From NCBI RefSeq assembly GCF_964204865.1, contig NC_135261.1, positions 14,570,001 through 14,634,000 of the forward strand: a stretch of 64,000 bases of DNA, read 5' to 3'. Position 1 is the stretch's first letter. The number at the start of each line of letters is the position of its first letter. Source of the DNA: Styela clava. Its lineage: Eukaryota. The notes under the pieces are model-generated. The model did not search any database. It saw nothing but the letters and a program-made list of their open reading frames with translations, and had not been told where the DNA came from. Position numbers and translations under genes: made by a program. This document shows positions 1 through 56,773 of the stretch, in pieces.

Positions 1-3000
1 TGCACAAGTTTTTTTGTCGTTGTGTTTGCTTTCGTTTCCAGAACCAATGGTAAGAGCATGTTCATTATTATGTTTTGTTCATTTATTTGCTTTCAATATT
101 CCGTCTATATAAACATCATTTTTTTTATTTAAATTACTACCTTTCAGCATTAACATGTTATACGTGCTCTGATTCCAACTACAATGGTGAAGCAGCAGAA
201 ACATGTTTTTCAACGGTGTCCGGGACGACGTCCTCTGCAACCTGTACAGCTGATAGTGGAACAACCGTGTATTATTGTCGATCACAATTTACTATTACAG
301 ACGGTTTGTGATTTAGCATTTTTAACATTTTTATTGTCATTGTCTTCGAAAAAGATCTAGTATGAATTAACAGAAAACTTCAACATGCAAACAATAAAAA
401 GCATATTCACCAAAACAGTATAAAATGTATATGTTCAAATTTATTTTACTTAAAATCTGTTTAATTTTATTGGTAATTTTATTAACTTACCAAATACATC
501 AAATTCGCTGATTCTTACAATCTTGAGAAATTATTAGGTTTTACATTATCACGTTAACAATTTGGGCACTATCAAATCATTTTGGAACGATTTTTACGAA
601 AGATACCCTTGAGATCACTTCCATATCAAAACGGATACGCTAACAAAACTTTTGTTTTCGATCAAAATAGAAAAAAAGACAAGTGTGAGCATGGATTGTG
701 AACACTCTTCTTCAAAAATATAAATTGTAATAAAGAATACCATAATATTTGTTTGGAGTAGCGGTAATATTTTAAAATAGGAAACATAGTGCGCGAAGTT
801 GAATATAAAGTTGATATTGTGTGATTTTATTTCTAACAATTTTGCATACAGGAGTCACAACTGCAATCGCTAGGGCATGTGTTGCCAGTACAGGTGATGA
901 GGATGCTAATACAGAAGCGGTTCCTACTTCAGACAAGTGTACCACAGTTCTTGATGAAAGTGGAAATCCTACCGGCATTACGACTTGCTCCTTCCATTGT
1001 ACAACCGACAATTGCAATACCAAATCTACAAGTAAGTAGTCAAATGCACAGGAGTCGATGCTGTAAGTTTTCTAAGGTATATTTATGTGTCAAAAATAAC
1101 GTAAAAATCTGAATTGCAGTGTCATCAATATTAAACAAAATACACAATAAGCGCTATAATAAGACTTCGTATATACTGTATATAAAGGGTTGTAATCATT
1201 CACTTGAATCACAAGGGAATTGCCCACCCTTTGTGTATTTATTAGAGTGATTTAATTTATTAAAACATGATTTAGCCTCTCTGGTGCAATGTTCAACCAA
1301 TTGCAATAGTGGGAGTAGCGGAGGAAGTTGTAACTACATCACAGGAACATGCGTTTGCAAGAGTGGATTCAGTGGATCAGATTGTACGACTGCAAGTGAG
1401 ATTTTTTTATTCACTGTTTATATATTGGGAAGTAAGAATGAAAAAAAAAATGTTGAAAATATCATTCATTAATAACAATTCATTTTATTAAACATTTTTA
1501 GCTACAACCACCTCGACAGTATTAAGAAAATGTGTTCAGTGTAACTCAGAAACCGATAGTGGATGCAGTTCATCGACAACAAGCGTGGATTGCCCAGGAA
1601 GTGAAACTTTCTGTTCTACAACAACTTCCACTATCTATGACGCATGTGGGCAATATACTACTTTTTATTATTAAATATAATATCCTTTAATACGACAAAA
1701 TGATCATTGAGAAAAAAAAATTATTTTTTTAGCTGATGCGATTATCCGCACTGTCACAACCAGAGGTTGCACGACATTGTTCAAAGCTGTGGATGAATGT
1801 AGTTTTAATGATATTCATACCGATGCTCCAATCAGCGATTCAAGTGTAGGATACAAAGAGTTCAACTGTTTTTCTACTTGTGATACTGATGGCTGCAATA
1901 CTAATACAGGTGAGAGTTGTTAGAACTTTGCTTTTCGCGTAATCATTTCAGATAAATATATTTCAGACAAAATGTTGAATACTAAAGTTAGACAAGTTAT
2001 CTAGCAAATATACCTAAACACTACACTCTTAGATCAAAAATTCGCGGAGTAAAAATCGAGTTTACACCAGTAATTCTTCACCTTTTGAAGTGGATGTAAA
2101 TCCGTCGATGAAACTTTTACTATTGAGGGTTTATTTATTGCAGCCGATGGAGTGATCAATGGAAACGAAGCGATTGTATTGCAATGTGTTGTATGTAGTG
2201 ATACCACTGGTTCGGGAAGTTGTGACACAGCTACTGCAAGACAAGCTTGTGCCAGCGGTTCAACGCATTGTAAGGCCACAGCCATTTATTTGATTTCCGA
2301 CAGAACTGATTTATCGTACTCGGGTAAGTTAGAGTTTTCTGAATATGAACTTAAACATTGTATTCTGCTCTTCAGTCTTCACTGGCCATTTTATTTAGTG
2401 ATCGTATATGCATAATTGTTGAAATTGACTGAGCACATATTGCGTGTATCATATCTATCACAATTTTATTTAGTTCGAAAATATATATAGAAATAAATTT
2501 TTAGGCTTGTTTTCATTTTTTAGGTATTCATAGTATTTTTTTTTTATTCATTTTTTTACACTACTCTGAGCTGTCTCTTTGACGTAATACGGAGCAAGTC
2601 TCTGATAGCCGGTAGCTGATGACAATTTGTCAATGGTGATACACTCACTACAGCAGAGATCGCTTGCGAGTGTAGTCATTATGAAGATTTTTACTTATTG
2701 GCTAGTTTTGGGGGAATTTTGTCCGGATCCGAAATATAATAGATGAATTTGTAACAAAATCACTTTTTTTCAATACAGCCGCGCCAGGATATAAACTTGT
2801 TAGTCTTGTGCGTGAATGCGCAACGGCTTCTGTAACGACTGAATGTACGGAATCTTCAATCGGAAGTCTTAGCTTGAAAAAAGTTACTTGTGCTGAAACT
2901 TGCCAGGGTGACGGGTGTAACACAGGATGGCGTAAGTTCCATTCATAGTTTCAACTTTTATTACATCAGTATTGAATTTTGGGAACATGCATTGGATAAA

Positions 3001-4168
3001 CATTGGCTTTGAATATGATATAATGTTCATAAAAAATTATTTTTTTAAATATACAGTTAGTATCATTTTCACATGTTTTTTCGTTATCTGTAAATATAAT
3101 AGTTTATATTGCGTAAATAATTAATGTTTTTCAACGTTATTTCTTGTTGGATAAGAAGTTGATCGATTTGTTATTATGTTGTTGTTGTTCTTGCTCTGGT
3201 TGCTGTTCTTATTATTTTATTCTTACCGTTATTAAAAAAATCGCTTTTCATTTCAACTACCGTACTAATTGCTTGAAAGGTTCGGTGCTTGAAGATTGTA
3301 TTTTTTGGTAAAAGGCCATATATTTGAGCTCTTCTCAATTCTCTAAATTTCATAATTCAATGTGTTTCAGCTGCAAGACCCGAATGTATCACATGCTCGT
3401 CACATCTCGTATACGATACTGATGACTATGATCAATGCCTTGAAAATCCTCCTGTGGCTGCTGCTTGTACTTTTCCGTATGAAGCATACTGCGTGATCCA
3501 AGAAAGCGGAATACAAAAGGGAAACAGAAGTACGTAACTGGAACTCCCTATATCCATTTGTACAGTTGAGATATTAAAATACTGGTTTAGATTTTCAAAT
3601 TCGTTATCGTTACAGAAAGTGTTGAGGGATATCCTCGAAGAATAACTCGCGGTTGCTTCCATTCTGACATCGGAACTGCCTGCTCTACTTACACTCCTCG
3701 TGACACAGAAATGGAGTCATGCAATCGTACATGCACAACAGATGGATGTAATGTCGGTAAGTTATAGCTAATATAGAGATTTAAAAATGAGCAACTTCAT
3801 AAATATAAATGTTGTAACATTTGAGGAACTTATGGTTGTGTGTGTTCTATTTTTCTAATGAATATTTGAAGACATTTGATTACATCGTCACACAAAATAA
3901 TTGGTTGCTTCATAAATGTGAAATTGGTATCTTAAGTGCTGCAACTCATCTGCCATGTTCTGAATTTTCAACGTCTACGGTGTGGTATGAATATATTTAC
4001 GATAAATGAAAACTTTAAAAACTAACGAAACATATCTTTAACCTAATTATGTACACATTTTAAAGTTGTATATATCATAATATTTCAGGCAGTGGAAGCT
4101 CTATTCCGTTCCAGACGATGATCACCGTCGTAGCATTTGCTCTTCTTGGAAAGCTAACACAAATATAA
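1..4168 (+). CDS. Array copy 1: GPI-anchored LU-EGF-LU-LU-LU (Ly6/uPAR multidomain) protein, ATG just 5' of window; divergent 5' part, A-type 3' end
   Basis: Exons <1-49 (signal peptide ..CTSFFVVVFAFVSRTN), 148-303, 852-1031, 1276-1395 (EGF), 1502-1645, 1733-1909, 2144-2323, 2779-2931, 3371-3529, 3616-3756, 4089-4168. All introns are GT-AG and phase 1; the frame is open to TAA 4166-4168. Tail GSGSSIPFQTMITVVAFALLGKLTQI. Confidence 0.85.
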
Positions 4169-4670: not shown

Positions 4671-4676
4671 AATAAA
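4671..4676 (+). terminator. Candidate polyadenylation signal of A-type 3' UTR (repeated after copies 2-5)
   Basis: AATAAA about 500 nt after the stop, directly after the conserved CTTGACGAGTCGCCATAA block and followed by GT/T-rich sequence. Confidence 0.5.
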
Positions 4677-6109: not shown

Positions 6110-9100
6110 ATGAAACTATTCACGTCTTTCTTCGTGATGTTCTATACTTTTGGCTGCACATACGGTAAGTTCGATGAGAGGTGTTTTTGAAAATTTCGAA
6201 GCAATCGGCGTAGACGAAAAATTATACAAAAAGTTTAGCCTTCAACATATACATTGCTTTTATCCAGTTTGAAATAGATATTAAGTATGACACATAAAAA
6301 ACGACTAATATTGAGCACATCAAATTGAATTTGTCATTTCGATAAAGTTAATTTACATGACCTCTATGATTTATACTGATTTGTAAACAAGATAAACCCG
6401 GTTCTTTTATGCTTGTGCTTAACTTCAGATCACTTATACCTCTTGAACAATATTTATGAAAATTTATTATTTTAGGTTTGAATTGCTACACCTGCACAGA
6501 TACTAGTTATGATGGAGAGGCAGCAGAAACTTGTTTCACTACTGTATCAGGGACAACACCTTCTACTGCTTGTACAGCTGATTCGGGAACAACTGTGTAT
6601 TACTGTAGTACAAAATTCACAGTTGATGATGGTAAAGTTAAACTTTTCTGTTTTTCAACTAAAAGTTGCTCTGATATCAAAAAGCAATAAAACCATATTT
6701 CTGCTATCGATATTGTTAAGGTGTCACTACGGGTGTTGTGCGAGGCTGTGCTGCGAGTACTTCTGATGAAGACACTCACTCCGACGCAGTTCCAACCGCA
6801 GATAGATGCATAACTGCACTTGATGCTATCGGCAATCCAACCGCGACCACAGAATGCTACTATCATTGCAGCACACCTGACAACTGTAACACTGAAAATA
6901 CAGGTTTGCATTTAGGATTGATTGTTTGTATTGTACAAGATGAGAAGAAAAGAATGTATGATATGATATTTTTTTCAGCCTCGTTGAAACAATGCCCAAA
7001 TGATTGTAACATAGGAAGCTCTCAAGGAAGCTGCAACTATATTACCGGAGTATGCGTTTGTGCCTCAGGATGGTCTGGTACTGATTGCAACACGGCAGTT
7101 AGTAAGTAAATTTCTTATGTACTGATTCTTACAAACATTTCCTGTGGTATTGCGTGTTGTACTGAACAAAAATCAATTTTAGCTACAGAGAATAAAAGTG
7201 CAAGTACCATGCATTTATACTATATATTTATACTGGAGCTCCAGAAGTATGTGCACCAAGATGACGTACAACATAGTATGTGTATCAGATTATAGTTCAG
7301 TTTGTGCGCCATCTTGGTGCTCTTACTTTGGGAGCGCCTTTATACTTTATATTTCGAGATGTCCCAAAACGGGTGGTACAGAAAAATATGACAGGGCTAA
7401 TCACGTTCAAAAATATTACTATAAGTAATAATACTAATTTTTCAGAACGAAAGATAAAAAATGACACAAACAAGTTCAATTCGAAAGTTTCTCAGAGATG
7501 ACCATATATCTAGAAATAGGACGAAACGTTTTTATTAGAGTTGAACATGTAATGTAAAATCTACCCAGAGTAATAATATAAAAAATGTGTAAACATTTTT
7601 ATTAAAATAAGTAAATTTATTGAATATTCTATGTTTTCCTAGCTTCAACCTCAAGCGGGGCCTCCAGAAAATGTGTTCAGTGTAACTCGGAAATTGATAG
7701 CGGATGTACTACATCAACAACAAGTGTAGATTGTCCAGGGACTCAAGCATATTGCTCTACAAGAACATCAACCATTTTTGACGGATGTAGGTAGAATTGT
7801 TATATTTAACGGAAATTGAGAAGCGGAAAAAAACTGTATATATTATTTCATATTCAGCCGATGCAGTTATCCGCACTGTCACCACTAAAGCTTGCACATC
7901 TGATTTCAAAGCTGTTGATCAATGTGTATTCAACGATATTTACACTGACTCACCAATTAGCGATACAAGTGTTGGTTACAGCGAGTTTAACTGTTTCTCT
8001 ACCTGCGATACCGATGATTGCAACACCAACACAGGTTTGATTTTTAACATTGATATATTTTTTTCATACCGTTTTGTTATAAAACAGTGAAATGTTCTAA
8101 TTGGAATTTAAATATTTTTTTGGACAGTTTGGTAGAATAGGAAATTGATAACCGACATGATACTAATATTTGTGCTTCAGCTGATGGAGTGATCAACGGT
8201 AATGAAGCAGTTGTGCTCCAATGTGTCGTTTGTAGTGATACCACAGGAGCCGGTACCTGCAACACGGCAACAGCAAGACAAGCTTGTCCGAGCGGATCAA
8301 CTCATTGCAAACATACAGCAATATACCTTATATCTGACAGAGTTGATCTTTCTTACGCAGGTGGAAAAATTATATTTGTACAAAATATACCTGTAGGGCA
8401 AAATTAGTAATTTGTTCAAATTTCTTTCAAAATTTTGGCTGTTTTCTAATAAATTATATTGTAATAAGTATAAGCATTCATAGAGTGGCTATAATATTTA
8501 CGAAGCACAACTACAAGCAAATAATGATTAATATAATATTCCGAAAATGCAGATATTTGCAGAGTAGACATTTCATTTTTTACATTAATATATACAAATC
8601 TTTCATTTTTGAGAAAGGTTAAGGTTAAACTATCACTAACGCAAATAAACCTATAACAGCCGATCCAGAATTTAAACTTGTTAGTGTTGTACGTCAGTGC
8701 GCCACTGCTGCCGTGACAAGCCAATGCACTGAAGCTTCAGTTGGAAGTCTCAGTTTCAAGAAAGTTACTTGCACTGAAACATGCCAGGGTGACGGATGTA
8801 ACGTTGGATGGCGTGAGTTCTATTTTACATTTATTCAACCTGAAGTTTAGTGTGTTTGAAACATATTTAAGATTCATTTTTTTTCATCAATGTTAAATAC
8901 TGGAAGTACGTAATAATAAAATAAACACTGGATTTGAATATGATAAAATGTTTGAAAAATCCACTTATTAAAAGATACAGTTATTAATATTTTCACGCCA
9001 CTAGTAGTTTCTTCGTTGTCCAAAATTGATGCATACTCAAATTCCAATAATTACGATTAATTCATATTACGTCAATAGATGATGTTTTCTACGTTATTTC

Positions 9101-9929
9101 TCGCTAATTTTATAATTCGATGCGTTTTAGCTGCAAGACCCGAATGCATCACATGCTCGTCACATCTCATATACGATACTGATGACTATGATCAATGCCT
9201 TGAAAATCCTCCTATGGCTGCTGCTTGTACTTATCCGTATGAAGCATACTGCGTGATCCAAGAAAGCGGAAAAAAAAAGGGAAGCAGAAGTACGTAACTG
9301 GAACTCCCTATATCCATTTGTACAGTTGAGATATTAAAATATTGTTTTAGATTTTCAAATTTGTTATCGTTACAGAAAGTGTTGAGGGATATCCTCGAAG
9401 AATAACTCGCGGTTGCTTCCATTCTGACATCGGAACTGCCTGCTCTACTTACACTCCTCGTGACACAGAAATGGAGTCATGCAATCGTACATGCACAACA
9501 GATGGGTGTAATGTCGGTACGATATAGCTAATCTAGAGATTTTAAAATTGAGCAACTTCATAAATATAAATGTTGTAACATTTGAAGAACTTATGGTTGA
9601 GTGTGTTCTATTTTTCTAATGAATATATGAGAACATATGATTACATCGTCACACAAAATACTTGGTTTCTTTATAAATGTAAAATTGGTATCTTGAGTGC
9701 TGCAACTCATCTGCCATATTCTGAATTTTCAACGTCTACGGTGTGGTATGAATATATTTACGATAAATGAAAACCTAAAAAACTAACGAAACATATCTTT
9801 AACTTAATTTTTTACACATTTTAAAGTTGTACATATCATAATATTTCAGGCAGTGGAAGCTCTATTCCGTTCCAGACGATGATCACCGTCGTAGCATTTG
9901 CCATTCTTGGAAAGCTAACACAAATATAA
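6110..9929 (+). CDS. Array copy 2: intact 516-aa signal peptide-LU1-EGF-LU2-LU3-LU4-GPI protein (A-type)
   Basis: Exons 6110-6164 (MKLFTSFFVMFYTFGCTYG), 6476-6631, 6721-6903, 6979-7101, 7643-7786, 7858-8034, 8181-8360, 8660-8812, 9131-9289, 9376-9516, 9850-9929, total 1551 nt with no internal stop. Four domains have 10 Cys, start CxxC and end C-x3-C-x4/5-CN. EGF: CPNDC..GSCNYITGVCVCASGWSGTDC. Confidence 0.9.
7235..7338. mobile_element. MITE in intron 4 of copy 2, 8-bp TSD
   Basis: Imperfect TIRs GGAGCTCCAGAAGTATGTGCACCAAGATG / CATCTTGGTGCTCTTACTTTGGGAGCGCC flanked by TTTATACT (7227-7234, 7339-7346); absent from copies 5-10. Confidence 0.88.
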
Positions 9930-11882: not shown

Positions 11883-14800
11883 ATGAAACTATTCACGTCT
11901 TTCTTCGTGATGTTCTATACTTTTGGCTGCACATACGGTAAGTTCGATGAGAGGTGTTTTTGAAAATTTCGAAGCAATCGGCGTAGACGAAAAATTATAC
12001 AAAAAGTTTAGCCTTCAACATATACATTGCTTTTATCCAGTTTGAAATAGATATTAAGTATGACACATAAAAAACGACTAATATTGAGCACATCAAATTG
12101 AATTTGTCATTTCGATAAAGTTAATTTACATGACCTCTATGATTGTTTACTGATTTGTAAACAAGATAAACCCGGTTCTTTTATGCTTGTGCTTAACTTC
12201 AGATCACTTATACCTCTTGAACAATATTTATGAAAATTTATTATTTTAGGTTTGAATTGCTACACCTGCACAGATACTAGTTATGATGGAGAGGCAGCAG
12301 AAACTTGTTTCACTACTGTATCAGGGACAACACCTTCTACTGCTTGTACAGCTGATTCGGGAACAACTGTGTATTACTGTAGTACAAAATTCACAGTTGA
12401 TGATGGTAAAGTTAAACTTTTCTGTTTTTCAACTAAAAGTTGCTCTGATATCAAAAAGCAATAAAACCATATTTCTGCTATCGATATTGTTAAGGTGTCA
12501 CTACGGGTGTTGTGCGAGGCTGTGCTGCGAGTACTTCTGATGAAGACACTCACTCCGACGCAGTTCCAACCGCAGATAGATGCATAACTGCACTTGATGC
12601 TATCGGCAATCCGACCGCGACCACAGAATGCTACTATCATTGCAGCACACCTGACAACTGTAACACTGAAAATACAGGTTTGCATTTAGGATTGATTGTT
12701 TGTATTGTACAAGATGAGAAGAAAAGAATGTATGCTATGATATTTTTTTCAGCCTCGTTGAAACAATGCCCAAATGATTGTAACATAGGAAGCTCTCAAG
12801 GAAGCTGCAACTATATTACCGGAGTATGCGTTTGTGCCTCAGGATGGTCTGGTACTGATTGCAACACGGCAGTTAGTAAGTAAATTTCTTATGTACTGAT
12901 TCTTACAAACATTTCCTGTGGTATTGCGTGTTGTACTGAACAAAAATCAATTTTAGCTACAGAGAATAAAACTGCAAGTACCATGCATTTATACTATATA
13001 TTTATACTGGAGCTCCAGAAGTATGAGCACCAAGATGACGTACAACCTGAACATAGTATGTGTATCAGATTATAGTTCAGTTTGTGCGCCATCTTGGTGC
13101 TCTTACTTTGGGAGCGCCTTTATACTTTATATTTCGAGATGTCCCAAAACGGGTGGTACAGAAAAATATGACAGGGCTAATCACGTTCAAAAATATTACT
13201 ATAAGTAATAATACTAATTTTTCAGAACGAAAGATAAAAAATGACACAAACAAGTTCAATTCGAAAGTTTCTCAGAGATGACCATATATCTAGAAATAGG
13301 ACGAAACGTTTTTATTAGAGTTGAACATGTAATGTAAAATCTACCCAGAGTAATAATATAAAAAATGTGTAAACATTTTTATTAAAATAAGTAAATTTAT
13401 TGAATATTCTATGTTTTCCTAGCTTCAACCTCAAGCGGGGCCTCCAGAAAATGTGTTCAGTGTAACTCGGAAATTGATAGCGGATGTACTACATCAACAA
13501 CAAGTGTAGATTGTCCAGGGACTCAAGCATATTGCTCTACAAGAACATCAACCATTTTTGACGGATGTAGGTAGAATTGTTATATTTAACGGAAATTGAG
13601 AAGCGGAAAAAAACTGTATATATTATTTCATATTCAGCCGATGCAGTTATCCGCACTGTCACCACTAAAGCTTGCACATCTGATTTCAAAGCTGTTGATC
13701 AATGTGTATTCAACGATATTTACACTGACTCACCAATTAGCGATACAAGTGTTGGTTACAGCGAGTTTAACTGTTTCTCTACCTGCGATACCGATGATTG
13801 CAACACCAACACAGGTTTGATTTTTAACATTGATATATTTTTTTCATACCGTTTTGTTATAAAACAGTGAAATGTTCTAATTGGAATTTAAATATTTTTT
13901 TGGACAGTTTGGTAGAATAGGAAATTGATAACCGACATGATACTAATATTTGTGCTTCAGCTGATGGAGTGATCAACGGTAATGAAGCAGTTGTGCTCCA
14001 ATGTGTCGTTTGTAGTGATACCACAGGAGCCGGTACCTGCAACACGGCAACAGCAAGACAAGCTTGTCCGAGCGGATCAACTCATTGCAAACATACAGCA
14101 ATATACCTTATATCTGACAGAGTTGATCTTTCTTACGCAGGTGGAAAAATTATATTTGTACAAAATATACCTGTAGGGCAAAATTAGTAATTTGTTCAAA
14201 TTTCTTTCAAAATTTTGGCTGTTTTCTAATAAATTATATTGTAATAAGTATAAGCATTCATAGAGTGGCTATAATATTTACGAAGCACAACTACAAGCAA
14301 ATAATGATTAATATAATATTCCGAAAATGCAGATATTTGCAGAGTAGACATTTCATTTTTTACATTAATATATACAAATCTTTCATTTTTGAGAAAGGTT
14401 AAGGTTAAACTATCACTAACGCAAATAAACCTATAACAGCCGATCCAGAATTTAAACTTGTTAGTGTTGTACGTCAGTGCGCCACTGCTGCCGTGACAAG
14501 CCAATGCACTGAAGCTTCAGTTGGAAGTCTCAGTTTCAAGAAAGTTACTTGCACTGAAACATGCCAGGGTGACGGATGTAACGTTGGATGGCGTGAGTTC
14601 TATTTTACATTTATTCAACCTGAAGTTTAGTGTGTTTGAAACATATTTAAGATTCATTTTTTTTCATCAATGTTAAATACTGGAAGTACGTAATAATAAA
14701 ATAAACACTGGATTTGAATATGATAAAATGTTTGAAAAATCCACTTATTAAAAGATACAGTTATTAATATTTTCACGCCACTAGTAGTTTCTTCGTTGTC

Positions 14801-15709
14801 CAAAATTGATGCATACTCAAATTCCAATAATTACGATTAATTCATATTACGTCAATAGATGATGTTTTCTACGTTATTTCTCGCTAATTTTATAATTCGA
14901 TGCGTTTTAGCTGCAAGACCCGAATGCATCACATGCTCGTCACATCTCATATACGATACTGATGACTATGATCAATGCCTTGAAAATCCTCCTATGGCTG
15001 CTGCTTGTACTTATCCGTATGAAGCATACTGCGTGATCCAAGAAAGCGGAAAAAAAAAGGGAAGCAGAAGTACGTAACTGGAACTCCCTATATCCATTTG
15101 TACAGTTGAGATATTAAAATATTGTTTTAGATTTTCAAATTTGTTATCGTTACAGAAAGTGTTGAGGGATATCCTCGAAGAATAACTCGCGGTTGCTTCC
15201 ATTCTGACATCGGAACTGCCTGCTCTACTTACACTCCTCGTGACACAGAAATGGAGTCATGCAATCGTACATGCACAACAGATGGGTGTAATGTCGGTAC
15301 GATATAGCTAATCTAGAGATTTTAAAATTGAGCAACTTCATAAATATAAATGTTGTAACATTTGAAGAACTTATGGTTGAGTGTGTTCTATTTTTCTAAT
15401 GAATATATGAGAACATATGATTACATCGTCACACAAAATACTTGGTTTCTTTATAAATGTAAAATTGGTATCTTGAGTGCTGCAACTCATCTGCCATATT
15501 CTGAATTTTCAACGTCTACGGTGTGGTATGAATATATTTACGATAAATGAAAACCTAAAAAACTAACGAAACATATCTTTAACTTAATTTTTTACACATT
15601 TTAAAGTTGTACATATCATAATATTTCAGGCAGTGGAAGCTCTATTCCGTTCCAGACGATGATCACCGTCGTAGCATTTGCCATTCTTGGAAAGCTAACA
15701 CAAATATAA
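11883..15709 (+). CDS. Array copy 3: intact, protein apparently identical to copy 2
   Basis: Same 11 exons offset +5773 to +5780 from copy 2; the only exonic change I saw is synonymous (CCA>CCG, exon 3). Confidence 0.9.
13009..13118. mobile_element. Same MITE, intron 4 of copy 3
   Basis: Same TIRs and TTTATACT TSD; 6 nt longer than in copy 2. Confidence 0.88.
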
Positions 15710-37000: not shown

Positions 37001-37949
37001 GCAGCCATCCATACCACTCAAGTTGCATAATCCACGAAAGCGGGCTCGAGAAGGGAACTAGAAGTATGTGAGACAATATTCTTTTTGTAAAATTCACTTT
37101 ACAAAACTGAACTCGAACTATTTAAACAATTTTAAACATATTCTTCAAAATATTTCCATTTTTAACAGAAAGTGTGGAAGGATATCCTCGTAGAATTACC
37201 CGCGGTTGTTCCTATGCTGGAATAGGAAATGGATGCACATCTGCGCAACCTCGTGACACAGAAATTGAGACATGCAATCGCACATGTACTACTGATGGAT
37301 GCAACGTTGGTAAGATGTCATTTGAAGTAAAATTGTTTCGTGCTAATATAGCATAAAACCTATCTCAAGATAGTACTATAGCGTGAGGGTTACCGCTGTA
37401 TTTTCCATTCGTCATTCATATCACTTATTTACATCCTTCAATTTGACACTTTTCATTTGTACATATCCTAAGAATTATTTTGAATAGACAATTGAGCATA
37501 CTAATTCCATCATATTAAAGGAAGACAGGTTAAATACAACATCTTATATTATTTTTTAAATTTTATTTCATCGATTTCAATAATATATATTTTGAATTCG
37601 TTCTCACTACCTATCAACAAATTGCTTTCTTTTATACGAGCACCGGGTGACGCGGTAGACCTTGGACCGCACCTTAGTAGACAATATATCGCGGTAGACA
37701 TCATTTTATAGTAGCATAGTAGTATAGTATGTTTGAAATAATAGAAAAGTCCTAAATCGAATCATATACGTTATGTCCAGCCATGACTGCCATAGCAGTT
37801 TTTCAATGATTATAGGCATGAGGAGCAAACTGGGTTTTAATTATTACTTATTCTTAATTTCAGGAAGCGGAGGTTTGATGCCTGTCGTTACTCTTCTGAC
37901 ATTCCTTCTACCAGCAGCCTTTGGATTGCTCACACAACGTTATTTTTAA
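34026..37949 (+). CDS. Array copy 7: intact 514-aa protein, B-type promoter and tail, chimeric exon 9
   Basis: Exons 34026-34080 (MKYLTSFLVIFGILGRTYG), 34437-34592, 34682-34861, 34933-35055, 35404-35547, 35634-35810, 35965-36135, 36438-36590, 36905-37063, 37169-37309, 37864-37949, total 1545 nt. Tail GSGGLMPVVTLLTFLLPAAFGLLTQRYF. Confidence 0.88.
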
Positions 37950-43100: not shown

Positions 43101-44090
43101 TTATAATTCAATGCGTTTTAGCTGCAAGACCCGAATGCATCACATGCTCGTCACATCTCGTATACGATACTGATGACTATGATCAATGCATTGAAAATCC
43201 TCCTATGGCTGCTGCTTGTACTTATCCGTATGAAGCATACTGCGTGATCCAAGAAAGCGGAATACAAAAAGGAAGCAGAAGTACGTAACTGGAACTCCCT
43301 ATATCCATTTGTACAGTTGAGATATTAAAATACTGTTTTAGATTTTCAAATTTGTTATCGTTACAGAAAGTGTTGAGGGATATCCTCGAAGAATAACTCG
43401 CGGTTGCTTCCATTCTGACATCGGAACTGCCTGCTCTACGTACACTCCTCGTGACACAGAAATGGAGTCATGCAATCGTACATGCACAACAGATGGATGT
43501 AATGTCGGTACGTTATAGCTAATATAAAAATTTAGTAATGAGCAACTTCATAAATATAAATGTTGTAACATTTGGAGAACTTATGGTTGTGTGTGTTCTA
43601 TTTTTCTAATGAATATTTGAGGACATATGATTACATCGTCACACAAAATAATTGGTTGCTTTATAAATGTTAAATTGGTATCTTAAGTGCTGCAACTCAT
43701 CTGCCATGTTCTGAATTTTCAACGTCTAGGGGTGGTATGAATATATTTACGATAAATGAGAACTTTATGGCGGTAGACATCGTATCATAACATAGTAGTA
43801 TATTATGTTTGAAATAATAGAATAGTTCCAAATCGAATCATATACGTTTTATCCAGTCATGATTGCCTTAATAGTTTATTTCATTGATAATGAGCATTTG
43901 AAGCTATAGCACGAAATCAAGAAAACCAAAATATAAATAATAATACATATGAACAATAAAACTGGGCCTTAATTATTACCCATTCTTAATTTCAGGAAGC
44001 GGAGGTTTGATGCCAGTCGTTACTCTTTTGACATTCTTCCTTCCATCCAGCAGCCTTTGGATTGCTCACACAACGTTATTTTTAAACTAA
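40147..44090 (+). CDS. Array copy 8: B-type promoter, A-type LU4, B-type terminal exon with 4-nt duplication giving a new tail
   Basis: Exons 40147-40201, 40577-40732, 40822-41004, 41076-41198, 41635-41778, 41865-42041, 42189-42368, 42652-42804, 43122-43280, 43367-43507, 43996-44090. Tail GSGGLMPVVTLLTFFLPSSSLWIAHTTLFLN. Confidence 0.8.
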
Positions 44091-46389: not shown

Positions 46390-49300
46390 ATGAAATATTC
46401 AACATCTTTTTCTGTAATCTTTAGTATCCTTGGCCCTACGGTAAGTTTAATAAGAGGCATTTATGCATCTAATTTATAGAAGTGTGAATTACAATATCAA
46501 AGCAAAAGTTATACTAACCTTGTTCTTGGAAATTTTTGAACCATGTATGTGGACGAAACATATTGCAAATAGTTTATCCCCCAAGTACGTTGTCAAATCC
46601 ACTTTGAAATATTCGAAATATGAAAATTTATTAATGTGCAACACCACTTGGATAATTGCCAATTTAATTTTCCAATTCTATAACAAAGTTAATTTTAAAA
46701 TTTTGATATCATTATTTACTGTTTGGAAACACGATAAAACCGACTCTTTTATGCTTATGCTTATCTTGAGATAACTTACCTCTTGAACAATTTTGTAACA
46801 ACCATTAATTATTTTAGGTTTGGATTGCAACACCTGCACAGATACTAATTATCATGGAGAGGCAGCAGAAACTGTTTCACTACTGTATCAGGGACAACAA
46901 CTTCTACTGCTTGCACTGCTGATTCGGGAACTACTGTGTATTACTGCAGTACAAAATTTACAGTAACTTTAAAATAAAGCTGAACTGATATCAAACAGCT
47001 ATAAAACCATATTTCTGCTCTCGATATTGTTAAGGTGTCACTACGGGTGTAGTGCGACGCTGTGCTGCGAGTACGTTTGATGAAGACACTCACTTCGACG
47101 CTGTTCCAACCGCAGTATAACTGCTCTTGATGCTATCGGCAATTCTACCGCGACCACAGAATGCTACTATCATTGCAGCACACCTGACAACTGTAACACT
47201 GGAAATTAAGGTTTGCATTTAAGATTGAATTTTAAGCACAAGCTAGAAAAAGGAGAATTATCATGATAAATTTTTTTCAGCCTCTTTGAAACAATGCCCA
47301 AATGATTGTACCTCCATAGTCAAGGGAGCTGCAACTATATCACCGGAGTATGCGTTTGTGCCTCAGGATGGTCAGGTACTTATTGCAACACGGTAGTTAG
47401 TAAGTAAACTTCTTAAGTACAGATTCTTACAAACATTTCTTTTGGTATGGCGTGTTGTATTGAACTGAAATCATTTATTTTTTCTACAGAGAATCATAGT
47501 GCAAGTACCAGGCGTTTTAATAATATCTCTAGATGTCCCAAAACAGTCGTGGTACAGAACGATATTGTACTCATGTTCGGAAAAAATGACTTGATCCCAA
47601 AAGTGTTACTTATAGTATTAATGATAATTTTTCCGAACGAAAAAAAATATATGCCACAAAGATGTTCAATTCGAAAGTTCTTCAAATATTAGTATATATT
47701 TAGAAATTGGTCGAAACGTTCTAATTAGAGTTGAACACATAATGTAAAATCTACCCAGAGTAATAATAGGAAAAAAGACTTAAGATTTATAATAATATAA
47801 GTAAACCTATTTAAAATTCTATGTTTCCCTAGCTTCAACGCTAATCTGGGCCTCCAGAAAATGTGTTCAGTGTAACTCAGAAATTGATAGCGGATGTAGT
47901 ACATCAACAAGTGTAGGTGTAGACTGTCCAGGGACTGAAGCATATTGCTCTACATGAACATCAACCATTTTTGACGGATGTAAGTAGAATTGTTATAATT
48001 AACGAAGATTGAGAAGCTTAAAAATAGTTTGAAAAATCAATTTGTATATATTATCCCATATTCAGCCGATGCAGTTATCCGCACTGTCACCACCAAAGCT
48101 TGCTCAGCTAATTTCAAAGCTGTTCATAAATGCGTATTCAACGATATTTACAGTGACTCACCAATTAGCGATACAAGTGTTAATTACAGCGAGTTTAACT
48201 GTTTCCCTACCTGCGATACCGATCATTGAAAAACCAACACAGGTTTGATTTTTGATTTCTAGCATTGAAATATTTTTTTCATACCGTTTTGTTATAAAAC
48301 ATTGAAATATTCTAATTTGACATTTGAAATATTTAATGAGAAAGCAGTTTGGGAAGTTTATAACCGACATGATAATATTATTTGTGCTTCAGCTGATGGA
48401 ATGATGAACGGTAATGAAGCAGTTGCGCTTCAATGTGTCGTTTGTAGTGATACCACAGGGGGCGGTGGTTGCAAAAAAGTAACAGCAAGACAAGCTTGTC
48501 CGAGCGGATCAAATCATTGCAAACATACAGCAATATACCATAAAGCTGACAGAGTCGATCTTTCTTACACATATGAATAAATTACTTTTGCACAGAATAT
48601 GCCTGTGGGCAAAGTTAGGTACATTGTTTGAATTTCTTTAAAAAATTTGGCTGTTTTCATTGAATTATTTTGCAATAATTATAAGCATTCGTAGGAAGGC
48701 TATAAAATTTACGAAGCACAACTGCAAGCAGATATGATAATGCAGATATTCCCAGAATAGACATTTTATTTTTTTCCCACTATTATATACAAATCTTTCA
48801 TTTTAGGCAAAGGAATAAGTTTAAACTTTCACTTATATAAATAAATCTATAACAGCCGATCCGGGATATAAACTTGTTAGTGTTGTACGTGAGTGCGCCA
48901 CTGCTGCCGTGACAAGCGGATGCACTGAAGTTTCAGATGGAAGTCTCAGTTTCAAGAAAGTTACGTGCACTGAAACATGCCAGGGTGACGGATGTAACGT
49001 TGGATGGCGTGAGTTCTTTTTTACATTTAATCAACTTAAAGTTTAGTTTGTTTGAAACATATTTAGAATTCATTTTTTTAGAATTGTTATATATTGGGTG
49101 ATTATATTAATTAAATAAACACTGGATTTGAATATGATATAATGTTTGGAAAATTCACTTATGAAATTATACACCTATTATTATTATTTTTACGCCGCTA
49201 GTAGTTTCTTCGTTGTCCAAGATTAATGCATACTCGAATTCCAATGGTTACCATTAGTTTATCTTACGTCAATAGATGATATTTTCTACTTTATTTCTGG

Positions 49301-50393
49301 CTAATTATGTAATTCAATGCGTTTTAGCTGCAAGACCCGAATGTATCACATGCTCGACAAACACTGGTGCCACAGTTAATGATTACGATACTGATGGCTC
49401 TGATCAATGCCTTAAAAATCCACCAATGCCAGCTGCATGCAGTCATCCATACCACTAAAGTTGTGTAATCCACGAAGGCGGGCTCGAGAAAGGATATAGA
49501 AGTATGTGAACCAATATTATTATTTTTTTAAATTTAATTTACAAAACTTAACTCGATTAATTTAAACAATTTTAAACATATTCTTTAAAATATTTCCATT
49601 TTCATTATAACAGAAAGTGTGGAGGGATATCCTCGTAGAATTACTCGCGGTTGTCCCTATGCTGGAATAGGAAATGGATGCACATCTGCGCAACCCCGTG
49701 ACACTGAAATTGAGACATGCAATCGCACATGCACTACTGATGGATGCAACGTTGGTAAGATGTCATTTGAAGTAAAATTGTTTTGTGCTATTAGACCACG
49801 AAACCTATCTCAAGATAGTACTATAGCGTAAGGGTTACCGCTGCATTTTCCTTTTGCCATGCATATCGCCTATTTATATGCTTTAATTTTGCTATGAACG
49901 CTTAATTTGTACATATCCTAGGAAATAATCAAATATAAAATTGAATTAGTCACCATTTTAAGGGAAGAAAGGTTAAATACAACATGTTATAATATTTTCA
50001 TCTATTCGTTCCATCAATGACAATAATAGATATTTTTAATTCTTTCCTGGTACCTACCAACAAATTGCCTCCTTTTATACGAGCAGCGGGTGACGAGGTA
50101 GACCTTGGACTGCACCTTAGTAGGCAATATATCGCGGAAGACATCATGCTATAATAGCATAGTAGCATAGTATGTTTGAAATAATAGAAAAGTTCCAAAT
50201 CGAATCCTATACGTTATGTCAATCCATGACTGCCATAGCAATTTTTTCAATGATTATAGGCATGAGGAGCAAACTGGGTCTCAAGTATCACTTATTCTTA
50301 ATTTCAGGAAGCGGAGGTTTGATGCCAGTCGTTACTCTTCTGACATTCCTACTTCCAGCAGCCTTTGGATGGCTCACACAACGTTACTTTTAA
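46390..50393 (+). pseudogene. Array copy 9: full-length pseudogene (B-type)
   Basis: Frameshifts in exons 1 (-4), 2 (-1, donor deleted), 3 (-7) and 4 (-4). TGA in exon 5 (~47955) and exon 6 (48227), exon 7 donor lost, TAA in exon 9 (49456). Transposon in the promoter. Confidence 0.92.
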
Positions 50394-52738: not shown

Positions 52739-55700
52739 ATGAAATATTTAACACCTTTTTTTGTGATCTTTGGTATCCTTGGCCGTACATACAGTAAGTT
52801 TGACAAGAGGCATTGATGCTTCTAATTTGTAAAAGAGAAAATTAGAATATCACAGGAAAAATTATACCAACCTTTTTTAAACAATGTATTTAATTAAGCG
52901 AAACGTGTTACAAATTGTTTGTCCCTTAATTACGTTGTTATATCCACTTTTAGACTTTGAAATATTCAAAGTATGAAAAGCCAATAACGTGTAACCAAAC
53001 TTGGATAATTACCAATTTAATTTCTTATTTCAATAACAAAGTTTATTTTACGATTTCGCTATGATTGTTTCATGCTTGCTAAAAACGATAAAACCTATTT
53101 TTTTTATTTTTATCTTCAGATCACTGACGTCTTGAACAATTTTGTAACAACCATTTATTATTTTAGGCTTGGATTGTTACGTTTGCAATGGTGCTCAATA
53201 TGATGGAGAGGCAGCGGAAACTTGTTTTACTATTGTAACAGGGACAACAGCTTCTGCTACTTGCGCTGCCGATGCCGGAACGAAAGTGCATTACTGCAAT
53301 GCAAAATTTACAGTTGTTGACGGTAAAGTTAAACTTTACTGATTTCTCAAAAAAATGTTGCACTGATATCAAACGAATATAAAATCATATATGTTTTGTC
53401 AATGTTGTTAAGGTGTCACTACGGCTGTTGAGCGAGCTTGTGCTGAGAGTGATGATGACGAAGACACTCACTCCAACGCAGTTCCAACCGCAGATAGATG
53501 TATAACTGTTATTGATGCTACCGGCAATCCGACCGCGATCACAGAATGCTTCTATCATTGCAGCGCACCCGACAACTGTAACACTGAAAATACAGGTTTG
53601 CATTTAGGATTGATTATTTTTGTACAAGATAAAAAGAAGAGAATTATTTGTATAATTGTTTTTCAGCCTCATTGAAACAATGCCCAAATAATTGTAACAG
53701 AGGAAGCTGCAACTATATCACCGGAGTATGCGTTTGTGACTCAGGATGGTCTGGTACTAATTGCAGCACGGCAGTTAGTAAGTAAATTCCTAATGTACAG
53801 ATTTTTACAAACATTTCCTGTGGTATGGCGTGTTGTATTGGACTGAAATTAATTTTTATTTGCTACAGAGAATCAAAGTGCAAGTACCATGCGTTTTATT
53901 AATATTTCTAGATGTCCCAAAATAGTCGTAGTACAGAACAATATGGTACTCTCGTTCGAAAAAAAAAATGAATTGATCAAAAAAGTGTTACTAATAGTAA
54001 TAAATCTATTTTTTCGGAACGAAAAAGAAAATATGCCACAAAGATGTTCAATTGGAAAGTTCTTCAGATATGACTATATATTTAGAAATAGGTCGAAACG
54101 TTCTGAATAGAGTTGAAACATGTAATTTAAAATCTACCCAGGGTAATAATATGAAAAAAGAATTAGGATTTATATTAATATAAGTCAACTTATTAAATAT
54201 TCTATGTTTTCCTAGCTTCAACCTCAAGCGGGGCCTCCAGAAAATGTGTTCAGTGTAACTCTGAAATTGATAGCGGATGTAGTACATCAACAACAAGTGT
54301 GGATTGTCCAGGGAATGAAGCATATTGCTCTACAGGAACATCAGCCATTTTTGACGGATGTAAGTAGAATTGTTATATTTAACGTAAATTGAGAAGCATA
54401 AAAATAAGTTGAAGAATCAATTTGTATATATTATTTCATATTCAGCCGATGCAGTTATCCGCACTGTCACCACTAAAGCTTGCACATCTGATTTCAAATC
54501 TGTTGATCAATGTGTATTCAACGAAATTCACACTGACTCACCGATTAACGATGTTGGTTACAGCGAGTTTAACTGTTTCTCTACCTGTGATACCAATGAC
54601 TGCAACACCAACACAGGTTTGATTTTCGATTTTTAACATAGAAATAATTTTTTCATTCAGTTTCATTATAAAATATTGAAAATTTCAATTTGACATTTGA
54701 AATATTTAACTACACGGCAGTTTGGGAAATTGATTACCCACATGATAATAGATAATATTATTTGTGCTTCAGCTGATGGAGTGATCAACGGTAATGAAGC
54801 AGTTGTGCTCCAATGTGTCGTTTGTAGTGATACAACAGGGGACGGTAGCTGCAACACAGCAACAGCAAGACAAGCTTGTCCGAGCGGATCAACTCATTGC
54901 AAACATACAGCAATATACCATATATCTGACAGAGTTGATCTTTCTTACACAGGTGGATAAATTACTTTTGTACAAAATATACCTGTAACGCAAAGTTAGT
55001 AATTTGTTTAAATTTCTTATTTTAGCTGTTTTCCAATAAATTATATTGTAATAAATATAAGCATTCATAGAGTGGCTATAATATTTACGAGGCACAACCA
55101 CAGCAAATAATGACTAATATATTATTCAGATAGTGCAGATATTTGCAGAGGAGACATTTTATTTTTTACATTAATATATACGAGTACATATATTTCATTT
55201 TTGAGAAAGGGTTTATGTTAAACTATCACTAACGCAAATAAACCTATAACAGCCGATCCAGGATATAAACTTGTTAGTGTTGTACGTGAGTGCGCCACTG
55301 CTGCCGTGACAAGAGAATGCGCTGAAGCTTCAGTCGGAAGTCTCAGTTTCAAGAAAGTCACTTGCACTGAAACATGCCAGGGTGACGGATGTAACGTTGG
55401 ATGGCGTGAGTTCTTTTTTACATTTTTTCAACTTACATTTAGTTTGTTTGAAACATATTTAGGATTCATTTTTTTGTTATCATTGTTTAATATTGGGAGT
55501 ATGTATTAATTAAATAAACACTGGATTTGAATATGATATTATGTTTCAAATATTCATTTATAAAATTATACACTTATTATTATTTTCACGCCGCTAGTAG
55601 TTTCTTCGTTATCCAAAATTAATGCATTCTCGAATTCCAATGGTTACCATTAGTTTATCTTACGTCAGTAGATGATATTTTCTACTTTATTTCTTGCTAG

Positions 55701-56773
55701 TTATATAACTCAATGCGTTTTAGCTGCAAGACCCGAATGTATCACATGCTCGTCACGTGCCACATACTATACTGATAGCTATGATCAATGCCTTGAAAAT
55801 CCACCAATGCCAGCTGCATGCAGTCATCCATACCACTCAAGTTGTGTAATCCACGAAAGCGGGCTCGAGAAAGGAACTAGGAGTATGTGAACCAATATTC
55901 TTTTTTTTTAAATTCACTTTACAAAATTGAACTCGATCAATTTAAACAATTTTAAACATATTCTTTAAAATAGTTCCATTTTCATTATAACAGAAAGTGT
56001 GGAGGGATATCCTCGTAGAATTACTCGCGGTTGTTCCTATGCTGGAATAGGAAATGGATGCACATCTGCGCAACCCCGTGACACTGAAATTGAGACATGC
56101 AATCGCACATGCACTACTGATGGATGCAACGTTGGTAAGATATCATTTGAAGTAAAATTGTTATATGCTATTACAGCACGAAACCTATCTCAAGATAGTA
56201 CTATAGCGTAAGGGTTACCGCTGCATTTTCCATTCGTCATGCACATCGCTTATTTATATGCTTTAATTTTGCTATGTACGCCTAATTTGTACATATCCTA
56301 GGAAATAATTAAATAGAAAATTAAATTAGTCACCATATTGAAGGAAGAAAGGTTAAATACAACATGTTATAATATTTTCATGTATTCATTCCATCAATGA
56401 CAATAATAAATATTTGGAATTATTTCCTGGTATCTACCAACAAATTGCTTCCTTTTATACGAGCAGCGGGTGACACGGTAGACCTTGGACCGCACCTTAG
56501 TAGGCAATATATCGCGGTAGACATCATTTTATAATAGCATAGTAGTATAGTATGTTTGAAAAAATAGAAAAGTTCAAAATCGAATCATATACGTTATGTC
56601 CAGCCATGACTGCCATAGCAGTTTTTTTAATGATTATAGGCATGAGAAGCAAACTGGGTCTCAAGTATCACTTATTCTTAATTTCAGGAAGCGGAGGTTT
56701 GATGCCAGTTGTTACTCTTCTGACATTCCTTCTTCCAGCAGCCTTAGGATTGCTCACACAACGTTATTTTTAA
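52739..56773 (+). CDS. Array copy 10: intact 512-aa protein, B-type
   Basis: Exons 52739-52793, 53167-53322, 53413-53595, 53667-53777, 54216-54359, 54446-54616, 54773-54952, 55253-55405, 55724-55882, 55994-56134, 56688-56773, total 1539 nt, open. Confidence 0.88.

What the first reader, a model, noticed from the sequence alone, without database searches (positions are those of the whole stretch)
1..56773. Ten-copy array of a GPI-anchored 4xLy6/uPAR + EGF protein: candidate undescribed diversified cell-surface recognition family
Seen: manual splicing yields SP-LU-EGF-LU-LU-LU-GPI in ten tandem copies (5 intact, 3 altered, 2 dead). Known: multi-LU GPI proteins exist (uPAR with 3 LU, CD177, C4.4A/LYPD3, TEX101), and LU proteins act in immunity, channel modulation and gamete recognition (Bouncer). 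I do not recognise a described family with an EGF module between LU1 and LU2. Inference: birth-and-death plus mosaicism fits an immune, allorecognition or gamete-recognition locus, with LU1 as a membrane-distal variable head.
Basis: partly seen in the sequence, partly recalled or inferred. Interest (0 to 1): 0.85.

Follow-up and report, generated by a model that had tools for sequence, protein, structure and literature searches.

The report
Sea-squirt array of four-LU surface proteins
The sea squirt Styela clava carries ten tandem copies of a gene for a lipid-anchored surface protein built from four three-finger (Ly6/uPAR) domains and one EGF domain; this layout is shared with Ciona and I found it in no paper, and its function is unknown.

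Summary
The window (Styela clava, chromosome piece C16) holds ten head-to-tail units of 4.5-6.4 kb. Each unit carries an 11-exon gene whose introns are all phase 1 and GT-AG. The gene encodes signal peptide, LU1, EGF, LU2, LU3, LU4 and a GPI-type tail, 516 aa in all.

The three-finger fold is supported by an AlphaFold model whose best structural matches are CD177, uPAR, C4.4A and TEX101. RefSeq already predicts these genes, but calls them uncharacterized or gives EGF-based misnomers. Full-length relatives exist in Ciona intestinalis and C. savignyi. I found none outside ascidians and no paper on the family.

The copies are mosaics made by gene conversion or unequal crossing-over. Proteins predicted from an older S. 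clava assembly are not encoded in this one, which suggests that array content differs between individuals.

LU1 is the most variable domain, but no exon has pooled pN/pS above 1. Old splits show purifying selection (0.08-0.25).

An immune, allorecognition or gamete role therefore remains a guess. I class this as a new variant of a known kind, of moderate interest.

The parts
1..4168 (+). Copy 1 (RefSeq LOC120330145, P0026, 516 aa), intact. Exon 1 begins 11 nt upstream of the window; window 1-49 holds the rest of it. The 5' part is an old, diverged lineage. The 3' part from about 3346 is 96% identical to copy 2.
6110..6164 (+). Copy 2 exon 1: start codon and signal peptide (MKLFTSFFVMFYTFGCTY), GT donor
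6476..6631 (+). Copy 2 exon 2: first half of LU1 (5 Cys); the most variable exon among copies
6721..6903 (+). Copy 2 exon 3: second half of LU1 (5 Cys, ends C-x5-CN)
6979..7101 (+). Copy 2 exon 4: EGF-like module (6 Cys). Pfam EGF_2 scores 22.9 bits against a cut-off of 22.1.
7643..8034 (+). Copy 2 exons 5 (7643-7786) and 6 (7858-8034): LU2
8181..8812 (+). Copy 2 exons 7 (8181-8360) and 8 (8660-8812): LU3. Exon 7 alone hits Pfam UPAR_LY6 at E 1.9e-5.
9131..9516 (+). Copy 2 exons 9 (9131-9289) and 10 (9376-9516): LU4, 3' module type A
9850..9929 (+). Copy 2 exon 11: small residues (GSGSS), then a hydrophobic tail and the stop codon. This is the GPI-type signal, type A.
11883..15709 (+). Copy 3, intact. 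Its protein is identical to copy 2's (P0044). The whole unit is 99.67% identical to unit 2.
17663..21487 (+). Copy 4, altered. A 1-nt loss in the A-run of exon 9 (20691-20848) shifts the frame. Exon 2 is replaced by a conversion-like patch.
23441..26965 (+). Copy 5, altered. Exon 7 (first half of LU3) is reduced to its first ~22-47 nt (25403-25449). All other exons are open.
28424..31796 (+). Copy 6, dead. No exon 1 or 2, exon 4 acceptor is AA, exon 8 has a stop and a TT donor, and one Cys is changed to Phe in exon 10. Tail is type B.
34026..37949 (+). Copy 7, intact, with in-frame deletions in exon 3 (180 nt) and exon 7 (171 nt). It has the 5' type II signal peptide and the 3' module type B (tail SGGLMPVVTLLTFLLPAAFGLLTQRYF).
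40147..44090 (+). Copy 8 (LOC120330144, P0011, 521 aa), altered. Exons 9 and 10 are type A, followed by a type-B tail exon with a frameshift that changes the last ~15 residues.
46661..50393 (+). Copy 9, dead. Frameshifts or stops in exons 3, 4, 5 and 6, and an AT donor at exon 7.
52739..56773 (+). Copy 10 (LOC120330427, P0024, 512 aa), intact, with in-frame deletions in exon 4 (111 nt) and exon 6 (171 nt). 3' module is type B.

Best explanation
The locus is a young, still changing tandem expansion of an ascidian-specific gene family. Each gene encodes a secreted-pathway protein with four 10-cysteine Ly6/uPAR three-finger domains and one EGF-like module between LU1 and LU2. The C-terminal signal most likely leads to a GPI anchor.

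Shown here: the gene structure, the domain content, the fold, conservation between Styela and Ciona, long-term purifying selection, and growth of the array by unequal crossing-over and gene conversion, which leaves mosaics and pseudogenes.

Inferred: by analogy with the only other multi-LU GPI proteins (uPAR, CD177, C4.4A, TEX101), the products sit on the outer leaflet of the membrane as protein-binding ectodomains. They have no cytoplasmic part, so they would act through a ligand and a transmembrane partner in cis or in trans. Neither the ligand nor the tissue is known.
For: - Ten units are present.
- The 11-exon, all-phase-1, GT-AG model holds in every non-dead copy.
- RefSeq protein P0044 is identical to the copy 2/3 model.
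- Pfam finds EGF_2 and UPAR_LY6 on single exons, and QVR on paralogues.
- The AlphaFold model has mean pLDDT 69, with domains mostly at 75-85.
- Foldseek's best matches are CD177, uPAR, C4.4A and TEX101, at E 5e-8 to 1e-3 and probability 0.99-1.0.
- The VIA re-alignment gives: LU3 to C4.4A at Z 10.2 (rmsd 2.5 A over 87 residues) and to uPAR at Z 9.8; LU2 to the TGF-beta type II receptor ectodomain at Z 7.7; LU4 to three-finger toxins at Z 7.5.
- All 46 structural Cys are invariant or nearly so across 13 Styela and Ciona proteins. None varies among the non-dead copies.
- The proteins have an N-terminal hydrophobic signal, no internal membrane segment, and a hydrophobic stretch at the extreme C-terminus after G-S-G-S/G.
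- dN/dS is 0.08-0.25 across old splits: copy 1 against the rest in LU2-LU3, and type A against type B in LU4.
- Mosaicism is direct: the 3' 2.3 kb of copy 1 is 96% identical to copy 2, while the 5' part aligns only in exons at 70-79%. Differences between copies 3 and 4 cluster at exon 2 and in the 3' part.
- The family was found only in Styela clava, Ciona intestinalis and C. savignyi, with separate expansions in each lineage.
Against: - There is no direct evidence of transcription in S. clava.
- No GPI or signal-peptide predictor was available, so the anchor rests on rule-of-thumb features. The type A tail has only about 11 strongly hydrophobic residues.
- LU1 is modelled with lower confidence (pLDDT about 50 over residues 86-111).
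- Pfam LU models do not reach E 0.1 on the full-length array proteins.
- Ligand binding and the need for a partner are analogy only.
Confidence: 0.65

Rival explanations
1. The array is a diversified recognition locus for immunity, allorecognition or sperm-egg recognition. Variation in the membrane-distal LU1 (and EGF) sets specificity and is kept by diversifying or balancing selection.
For: - LU1 is the most variable domain: 41% of sites vary and 14 sites have three or more states. Exon 2 varies at 53% of sites.
- Young copies have raised dN/dS of 0.35-0.9, against 0.08-0.25 for old splits.
- Exon 2 was swapped on its own in copy 4.
- Proteins predicted from an older S. clava assembly (P0001, P0027, P0042) are not encoded in this assembly. 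P0001 and P0027 match no LU or EGF exon exactly, and P0042 differs in exons 2-6. This suggests that array content differs between individuals.
- Birth-and-death with pseudogenes is typical of such loci.
Against: - Pooled pN/pS is below 1 for every exon (0.26-0.77) and is 0.62 for exon 2.
- Synonymous divergence in LU1 is raised in parallel, so older or less homogenised sequence explains the variability as well as selection does.
- Copies 2 and 3 encode identical proteins, and copy 4 is nearly the same. That is amplification, not diversification.
- There is no expression or tissue information.
- The differences from the older assembly may partly reflect chimeric gene models.
Confidence: 0.2
2. 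Amplification for dosage. The protein is an abundant surface or shed component, for example of epidermis, tunic, egg coat or blood cells. Copy number rises simply to raise output, and sequence differences are by-products.
For: - Units 2, 3 and 4 are 97.3-99.7% identical over 5.8 kb, with identical or near-identical proteins.
- Cysteines and the domain frame are fully conserved.
- The composition is rich in Ser and Thr (22-29%), as in heavily glycosylated surface proteins.
Against: - The other intact copies differ by 12-25% in protein sequence.
- There are two distinct 5' types and two distinct 3' types.
- Half of the copies are altered or dead, which a dosage demand would not favour.
Confidence: 0.1
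3. Largely neutral segmental duplication. One or two copies carry the ancestral function and the rest are drifting towards pseudogenes.
For: - Five of the ten copies are altered or dead.
- dN/dS among young copies is 0.35-0.9, which fits relaxed constraint.
Against: - No cysteine column varies among the eight non-dead copies.
- All deletions in copies 7 and 10 are in frame.
- Splice sites are kept in all open exons.
Confidence: 0.05

Closest known systems
CD177 (NB1), vertebrate GPI-anchored multi-LU protein
   Same: GPI-anchored with four LU domains (as stated in PMC6337849). It is the best Foldseek match (9igp_A, E 4.8e-8). A vole CD177 was one of the few non-tunicate hits in the exhaustive sequence search (E 4.9e-5) and shares the motif C-P-x-G-S-T-H-C with LU3.
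   Different: CD177 has no EGF module. In vertebrate multi-LU proteins the first LU domain lacks one disulfide (8 Cys; PMC6337849), whereas here all four have 10. Identity is about 14-24%. Orthology was not tested.
uPAR (PLAUR), C4.4A (LYPD3), TEX101
   Same: GPI-anchored proteins made of two or three consecutive LU domains. Domain-level structural matches are Z 9.8 (uPAR D1), 10.2 (C4.4A) and 9.0 (TEX101). From general knowledge of this family, each LU domain is encoded by two exons, as it is here.
   Different: They have two or three LU domains and no EGF module. Their C8 and C9 are an adjacent Cys-Cys pair, whereas here they are spaced C-x3-C. PMC6337849 places three-LU genes only after coelacanths, so the ascidian family is either older or independent.
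Ciona intestinalis LOC100177378 (XP_002129979, misnamed 'G surface protein, allelic form 156'), LOC100182096, LOC100184585, LOC108949271, LOC100177746; C. savignyi H2ZC24
   Same: Same family. They are 38-47% identical over the aligned part; the full-length models span 99-100% of the query and the shorter models 60-82%. The full-length models keep the SP-LU-EGF-LU-LU-LU-tail order, all cysteines and the tail.
   Different: They form a separate clade from all Styela genes, with support 87/94. I could not look at their genomic arrangement. None has a described function in the papers searched.
Single-LU GPI proteins of invertebrates (Drosophila Quiver/QVR family) and Bouncer/SPACA4
   Same: Pfam QVR is the LU model that recognises paralogues best: 34.7 bits for P0004 and 32.5 bits for P0023. 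These proteins are GPI-anchored and have 10 Cys. Bouncer shows that an LU protein can set gamete specificity (bioRxiv 10.1101/354688).
   Different: They have a single domain, no EGF module and no such tandem multi-domain array.

Membership tests
Ly6/uPAR (LU, three-finger) superfamily | 8-10 Cys per domain, in a fixed order, ending in C-N | tested here: met
   All four units have 10 Cys, begin C-x2-C and end C-x3-C-x4/5-C-N. These Cys are invariant or nearly so across 13 Styela and Ciona proteins. One deviation: C8 and C9 are three residues apart instead of adjacent.
Ly6/uPAR (LU, three-finger) superfamily | Three-finger beta fold | tested here: met
   AlphaFold model. Foldseek's top 26 hits (E <= 0.001) are all multi-LU proteins. 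VIA gives Z 10.2 for LU3, 7.7 for LU2 and 7.5 for LU4. LU1 is covered only within the multi-domain CD177 alignment and by its identical Cys pattern.
Ly6/uPAR (LU, three-finger) superfamily | Match to Pfam UPAR_LY6 or QVR above the gathering score | tested here: inconclusive
   Exon 7 alone scores 25.5 bits on UPAR_LY6 against a cut-off of 24.8. Paralogues P0004 and P0023 pass QVR (34.7 and 32.5 bits against 27.3). The full-length array proteins P0001 and P0011 give no LU hit at E <= 0.1.
Ly6/uPAR (LU, three-finger) superfamily | Each LU domain encoded by two exons, with phase-1 boundaries | tested here: met
   Exons 2+3, 5+6, 7+8 and 9+10 are all phase 1-1. That vertebrate LU genes share this layout is from my own knowledge and was not tested here.
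GPI-anchored proteins | C-terminal signal: small omega residues, a short spacer and a hydrophobic tail at the very end; release by PI-PLC | not testable with these tools
   The sequence features fit: G-S-G-S/G followed by a hydrophobic end (Kyte-Doolittle mean over 15 residues 1.9-2.3) with no cytoplasmic tail. No GPI predictor and no experiment were available.
Vertebrate multi-LU gene cluster (uPAR, CD177, C4.4A, Haldisin, TEX101, PINLYP) | First LU domain lacks one consensus disulfide (8 Cys), as stated in PMC6337849 | tested here: not met
   LU1 has 10 Cys, like LU2-LU4.
Vertebrate multi-LU gene cluster (uPAR, CD177, C4.4A, Haldisin, TEX101, PINLYP) | Orthology or conserved neighbourhood with the vertebrate cluster | not tested
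   No vertebrate or other tunicate genomes could be reached with these tools.
EGF-like domain | Six Cys in the EGF spacing, and a match to an EGF profile | tested here: met
   Spacings are 3-8-6-1-8. Pfam EGF_2 gives 22.9 bits against a cut-off of 22.1 on the window ORF 6720-7106. It scores below the cut-off on P0001 (18 bits).

The most novel reading that the evidence does not exclude
The array is a polymorphic self/non-self or gamete-recognition locus of a solitary ascidian. Haplotypes differ in copy content, exon-sized conversion shuffles the LU1 fingers, and the EGF module of one molecule is bound by the LU assembly of another, as uPAR binds the EGF-like domain of urokinase. That would be a recognition system built on three-finger domains, of a kind not yet known in tunicates.
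Probability: 0.12. Interest if true: 0.8.

Novelty: new variant of a known kind. Interest (0 to 1): 0.5.

Why it matters
Multi-domain Ly6/uPAR proteins are treated as a late vertebrate invention. PMC6337849 finds three-LU genes only after coelacanths. The 2026 survey of invertebrate three-finger proteins (PMC13719153) did not include tunicates and lists no LU+EGF layout.

A four-LU plus EGF family shared by Styela and Ciona shows that the sister group of vertebrates has long-standing multi-LU surface proteins. They are largely invisible to Pfam, and databases name them after their single EGF module.

The Styela array also gives a compact, readable case of birth-and-death and exon-scale gene conversion. 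It is a candidate, so far without functional support, for a variable surface receptor family in an animal group where recognition molecules are of long-standing interest.

Tried and rejected
The source of P0032 therefore stays unknown. P0032 is a 515-aa relative on a 1,875-base Logan contig, too short to hold the introns that the Styela genes carry, so it is most likely a spliced transcript of another tunicate.
- A database search with exon 7 alone, meant to catch short transcript fragments, found no candidates.
- A profile of the family against PDB sequences gave only a weak EGF hit.
- The joined spliced model was never sent to any tool. Exons were searched by reference. For whole-protein work I used RefSeq proteins returned by the searches, after checking exon by exon that P0044 equals copies 2 and 3.
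- LU1 and EGF could not be folded alone, because a two-exon domain has no single reference.
- Rfam found nothing in the window.
- Pfam found nothing in five longer non-exon ORFs from inside unit 2 and from 59-64 kb.
- ESM Atlas gave only weak look-alikes (score 0.79 or less), mostly LU-type families.
- Rejected, assembly artefact: units 2 and 3 differ at 19 positions, so they are two separate copies, not one sequence entered twice.
- Rejected, whole-domain positive selection on LU1: pooled pN/pS is below 1.
Full report
WHAT IS THERE

The window has 33% G+C and no N. It lies at G000:C16:14570001-14634000 of a 377-Mb genome. Proteins recovered from public databases name the organism as Styela clava. 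Earlier notes of this scan had given that lead.

A repeat search finds ten head-to-tail units with spacings of 4.5-6.4 kb.

I read copy 2 base by base and checked it by script. It has eleven exons. Every internal exon is flanked by AG and GT, and every intron is phase 1. The coding sequence is 1,551 nt, giving 516 aa.

| Exon | Coordinates | Encodes |
|---|---|---|
| 1 | 6110-6164 | hydrophobic signal peptide |
| 2, 3 | 6476-6631, 6721-6903 | LU1 |
| 4 | 6979-7101 | EGF-like module |
| 5, 6 | 7643-7786, 7858-8034 | LU2 |
| 7, 8 | 8181-8360, 8660-8812 | LU3 |
| 9, 10 | 9131-9289, 9376-9516 | LU4 |
| 11 | 9850-9929 | G-S-G-S-S, a hydrophobic end, and the stop codon |

Each LU unit has 10 Cys, begins C-x2-C and ends C-x3-C-x4/5-C-N. 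The EGF module has 6 Cys with spacings 3-8-6-1-8.

THE TEN COPIES

I mapped every exon in every unit.

- Intact: copies 1, 2, 3, 7 and 10.
  - Copy 1's start codon lies 11 nt before the window, and window 1-49 holds the rest of exon 1.
  - Copies 2 and 3 encode the same protein.
  - Copies 7 and 10 have only in-frame deletions.
- Altered:
  - Copy 4 lost one A in the A-run of exon 9.
  - Copy 5 lost most of exon 7.
  - Copy 8 has a frameshift in its tail exon.
- Dead:
  - Copy 6 has no exon 1 or 2, has lost one splice acceptor and one donor, and carries one stop and one Cys-to-Phe change.
  - Copy 9 has stops or frameshifts in four exons and a lost donor.

There are two signal-peptide types: copies 2-5, and copies 7, 8 and 10. 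There are also two 3' modules:
- Type A (exons 9-11) in copies 1-5.
- Type B in copies 6, 7, 9 and 10, with the tail SGGLMPVVTLLTFLLPAAFGLLTQRYF.
- Copy 8 joins type A exons 9-10 to a type B tail exon.

IS IT AN LU PROTEIN?

Single exons already hit Pfam:
- EGF_2 at 22.9 bits (cut-off 22.1).
- UPAR_LY6 at 25.5 bits (cut-off 24.8) for exon 7.
- The C-terminal half of QVR for exons 8 and 10.

An exhaustive HMMER search with exon 7 returned a 516-aa S. clava protein and a 524-aa Ciona protein. This gave me legitimate full-length sequences. P0044 (XP_077974387 and XP_077974794) equals my copy 2/3 model exon for exon. I did not send a joined model of my own to any tool.

An AlphaFold model of P0001, built with a 13-sequence family alignment, has mean pLDDT 69. 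Most domain cores are at 75-85.
- Foldseek ranks CD177, uPAR, C4.4A and TEX101 first, at E 5e-8 to 1e-3.
- The second-look aligner matches LU3 to C4.4A (Z 10.2, 2.5 A over 87 residues) and to uPAR D1 (Z 9.8).
- It matches LU2 to the TGF-beta type II receptor ectodomain (Z 7.7) and LU4 to snake three-finger toxins (Z 7.5).
- LU1 is less well modelled. It has the same cysteine frame, and it aligns within the multi-domain CD177 match.

The termini fit a signal peptide and a GPI-type signal, and there is no internal membrane segment. No predictor was available, so the anchor is an inference.

WHERE ELSE IT OCCURS

Word-indexed searches with the protein and with the family profile found only:
- S. 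clava, at 14 or more loci.
- Ciona intestinalis, at five loci.
- C. savignyi.
- One unnamed Logan contig.

The exhaustive search added only a vole CD177, at E 4.9e-5. It shares C-P-x-G-S-T-H-C with LU3.

RefSeq names for these proteins are 'uncharacterized', 'cell death abnormality protein 1-like', 'draper-like', 'comC' and 'G surface protein'. These are misnomers driven by the EGF module.

In a maximum-likelihood tree all Ciona genes fall on one side (support 87/94). The array copies form a recent, well-supported Styela clade.

The cluster extends beyond the window:
- A 58%-identical gene lies 3 kb upstream (L005).
- A distant gene lies further upstream (L001).
- Two more lie 17-31 kb downstream, one of them without the EGF exon (L006, L003, L007).
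- Another lies at 10.14 Mb (L004).

HOW THE ARRAY EVOLVES

Units 2 and 3 are 99.67% identical over 5,780 bp and differ at 19 positions. Units 2 and 4 are 97.3% identical.

Copy 1 is a mosaic. Its last 2.3 kb is 96% identical to copy 2, while upstream only the exons align, at 70-79%. In line with this, dS between copies 1 and 2 is about 0.03 in LU4 but above 1.4 in LU2 and LU3.

Differences between units 3 and 4 are clustered: 23 lie around exon 2, none lie over the next 1.8 kb of exons 5-8, and many lie from exon 10 onward. This agrees with the scan's separate note on exon 2 of copy 4.

Three proteins from an older S. clava annotation (P0001, P0027, P0042) are not encoded in this assembly. P0001 matches its best copy in only 42 of 51 residues of exon 2 and 52 of 60 of exon 3. 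A whole-genome search finds nothing better than 94% for any LU or EGF exon. This points to different array content in different individuals. The old gene models could be partly chimeric, so I treat this as suggestive only.

SELECTION

Across old splits dN/dS is 0.08-0.25, so the proteins have been kept by selection. Among the young copies it is 0.35-0.9.

LU1 is the most variable domain: 41% of sites vary, and 53% in exon 2, against 21-23% in LU2 and LU3. No Cys column varies.

Pooled pN/pS is below 1 in every exon (0.26-0.77), and it is 0.62 for exon 2. Synonymous divergence in LU1 is raised as well. The 'variable head' is therefore a fair description, but diversifying selection is not shown.

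WHAT IT MOST LIKELY DOES

The only well-studied proteins of this build are the vertebrate GPI-anchored multi-LU proteins. They bind extracellular proteins (uPA and vitronectin for uPAR, PR3 for CD177) and signal through partners. By analogy, I read the Styela proteins as lipid-anchored binding ectodomains that need a ligand and a transmembrane partner.

Immune, allorecognition or gamete roles stay open, because I could not examine expression. The Logan protein P0032 is a 515-aa open frame on a 1,875-base contig, too short to hold the introns seen in the Styela genes. It is indirect evidence that a relative is transcribed and spliced in some tunicate.

COMPARISON WITH WHAT IS KNOWN, AND NOVELTY

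The family meets the LU superfamily criteria that I could test. It fails one feature shared by the vertebrate multi-LU cluster, the 8-Cys first domain described in PMC6337849. I therefore do not file it there.

That paper places three-LU genes after coelacanths. The 2026 survey of invertebrate three-finger proteins covers no tunicate and never mentions EGF (PMC13719153). Nine literature searches found no description of an LU-EGF-LU-LU-LU protein or of any of the Ciona or Styela loci. The library lacks most subscription journals, so this is absence in what I could search, not proof.

VERDICT

This is a real, well-defined, ascidian-specific variant of the Ly6/uPAR family, in a dynamic tandem array. 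The genes are predicted in RefSeq but are functionally uncharacterised. Interest is moderate.

Noticed in passing
window 20691-20860: In copy 4 the 1-nt loss in the A-run of exon 9 could be offset by a GT donor 4 nt further downstream (exon end 20852). That keeps the frame and changes only the last six residues or so of the exon, so copy 4 may still be functional.
   Followed up: partly
window 23441-24432 joined to 35404-37949: RefSeq protein P0025 (LOC144430351) is a chimera. It takes exons 1-4 from copy 5 and exons 5-11 from copy 7, skipping dead copy 6. This is either a read-through transcript or an annotation artefact.
   Followed up: partly
window 32257-32300, 38386-38442, 44525-44575: Units with a type-B tail exon still carry a remnant of the 3' part of the type-A tail exon a few hundred bases downstream. 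The ancestral unit may therefore have held both alternative last exons.
   Followed up: no
L006:6934 to L003:1460 (G000:C16:14650934-14655460): A downstream paralogue (LOC120330428, P0004, 467 aa) has the four LU domains but lacks the EGF exon. This is a natural EGF-less variant of the family.
   Followed up: partly
P0001, P0027, P0042 (older S. clava RefSeq proteins): P0001 and P0027 match no LU or EGF exon of the present assembly exactly, although they clearly belong to this array. P0042 matches copy 10 exactly in exons 7-10 but differs in exons 2-6. This hints at structural haplotypes.
   Followed up: partly
window 8250-8300 (exon 7) and paralogues: The motif C-P-x-G-S-T-H-C in LU3 is shared with the LU domains of rodent CD177 (P0005). 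It is the only sequence-level link to a vertebrate protein that the exhaustive search found.
   Followed up: no
window 56800-64000: I recognised no gene after the last copy. There is no Rfam hit, and the three longer ORFs tested in 59-64 kb gave no Pfam hit. The next family member lies about 7.6 kb beyond the window (G000:C16:14641575).
   Followed up: partly
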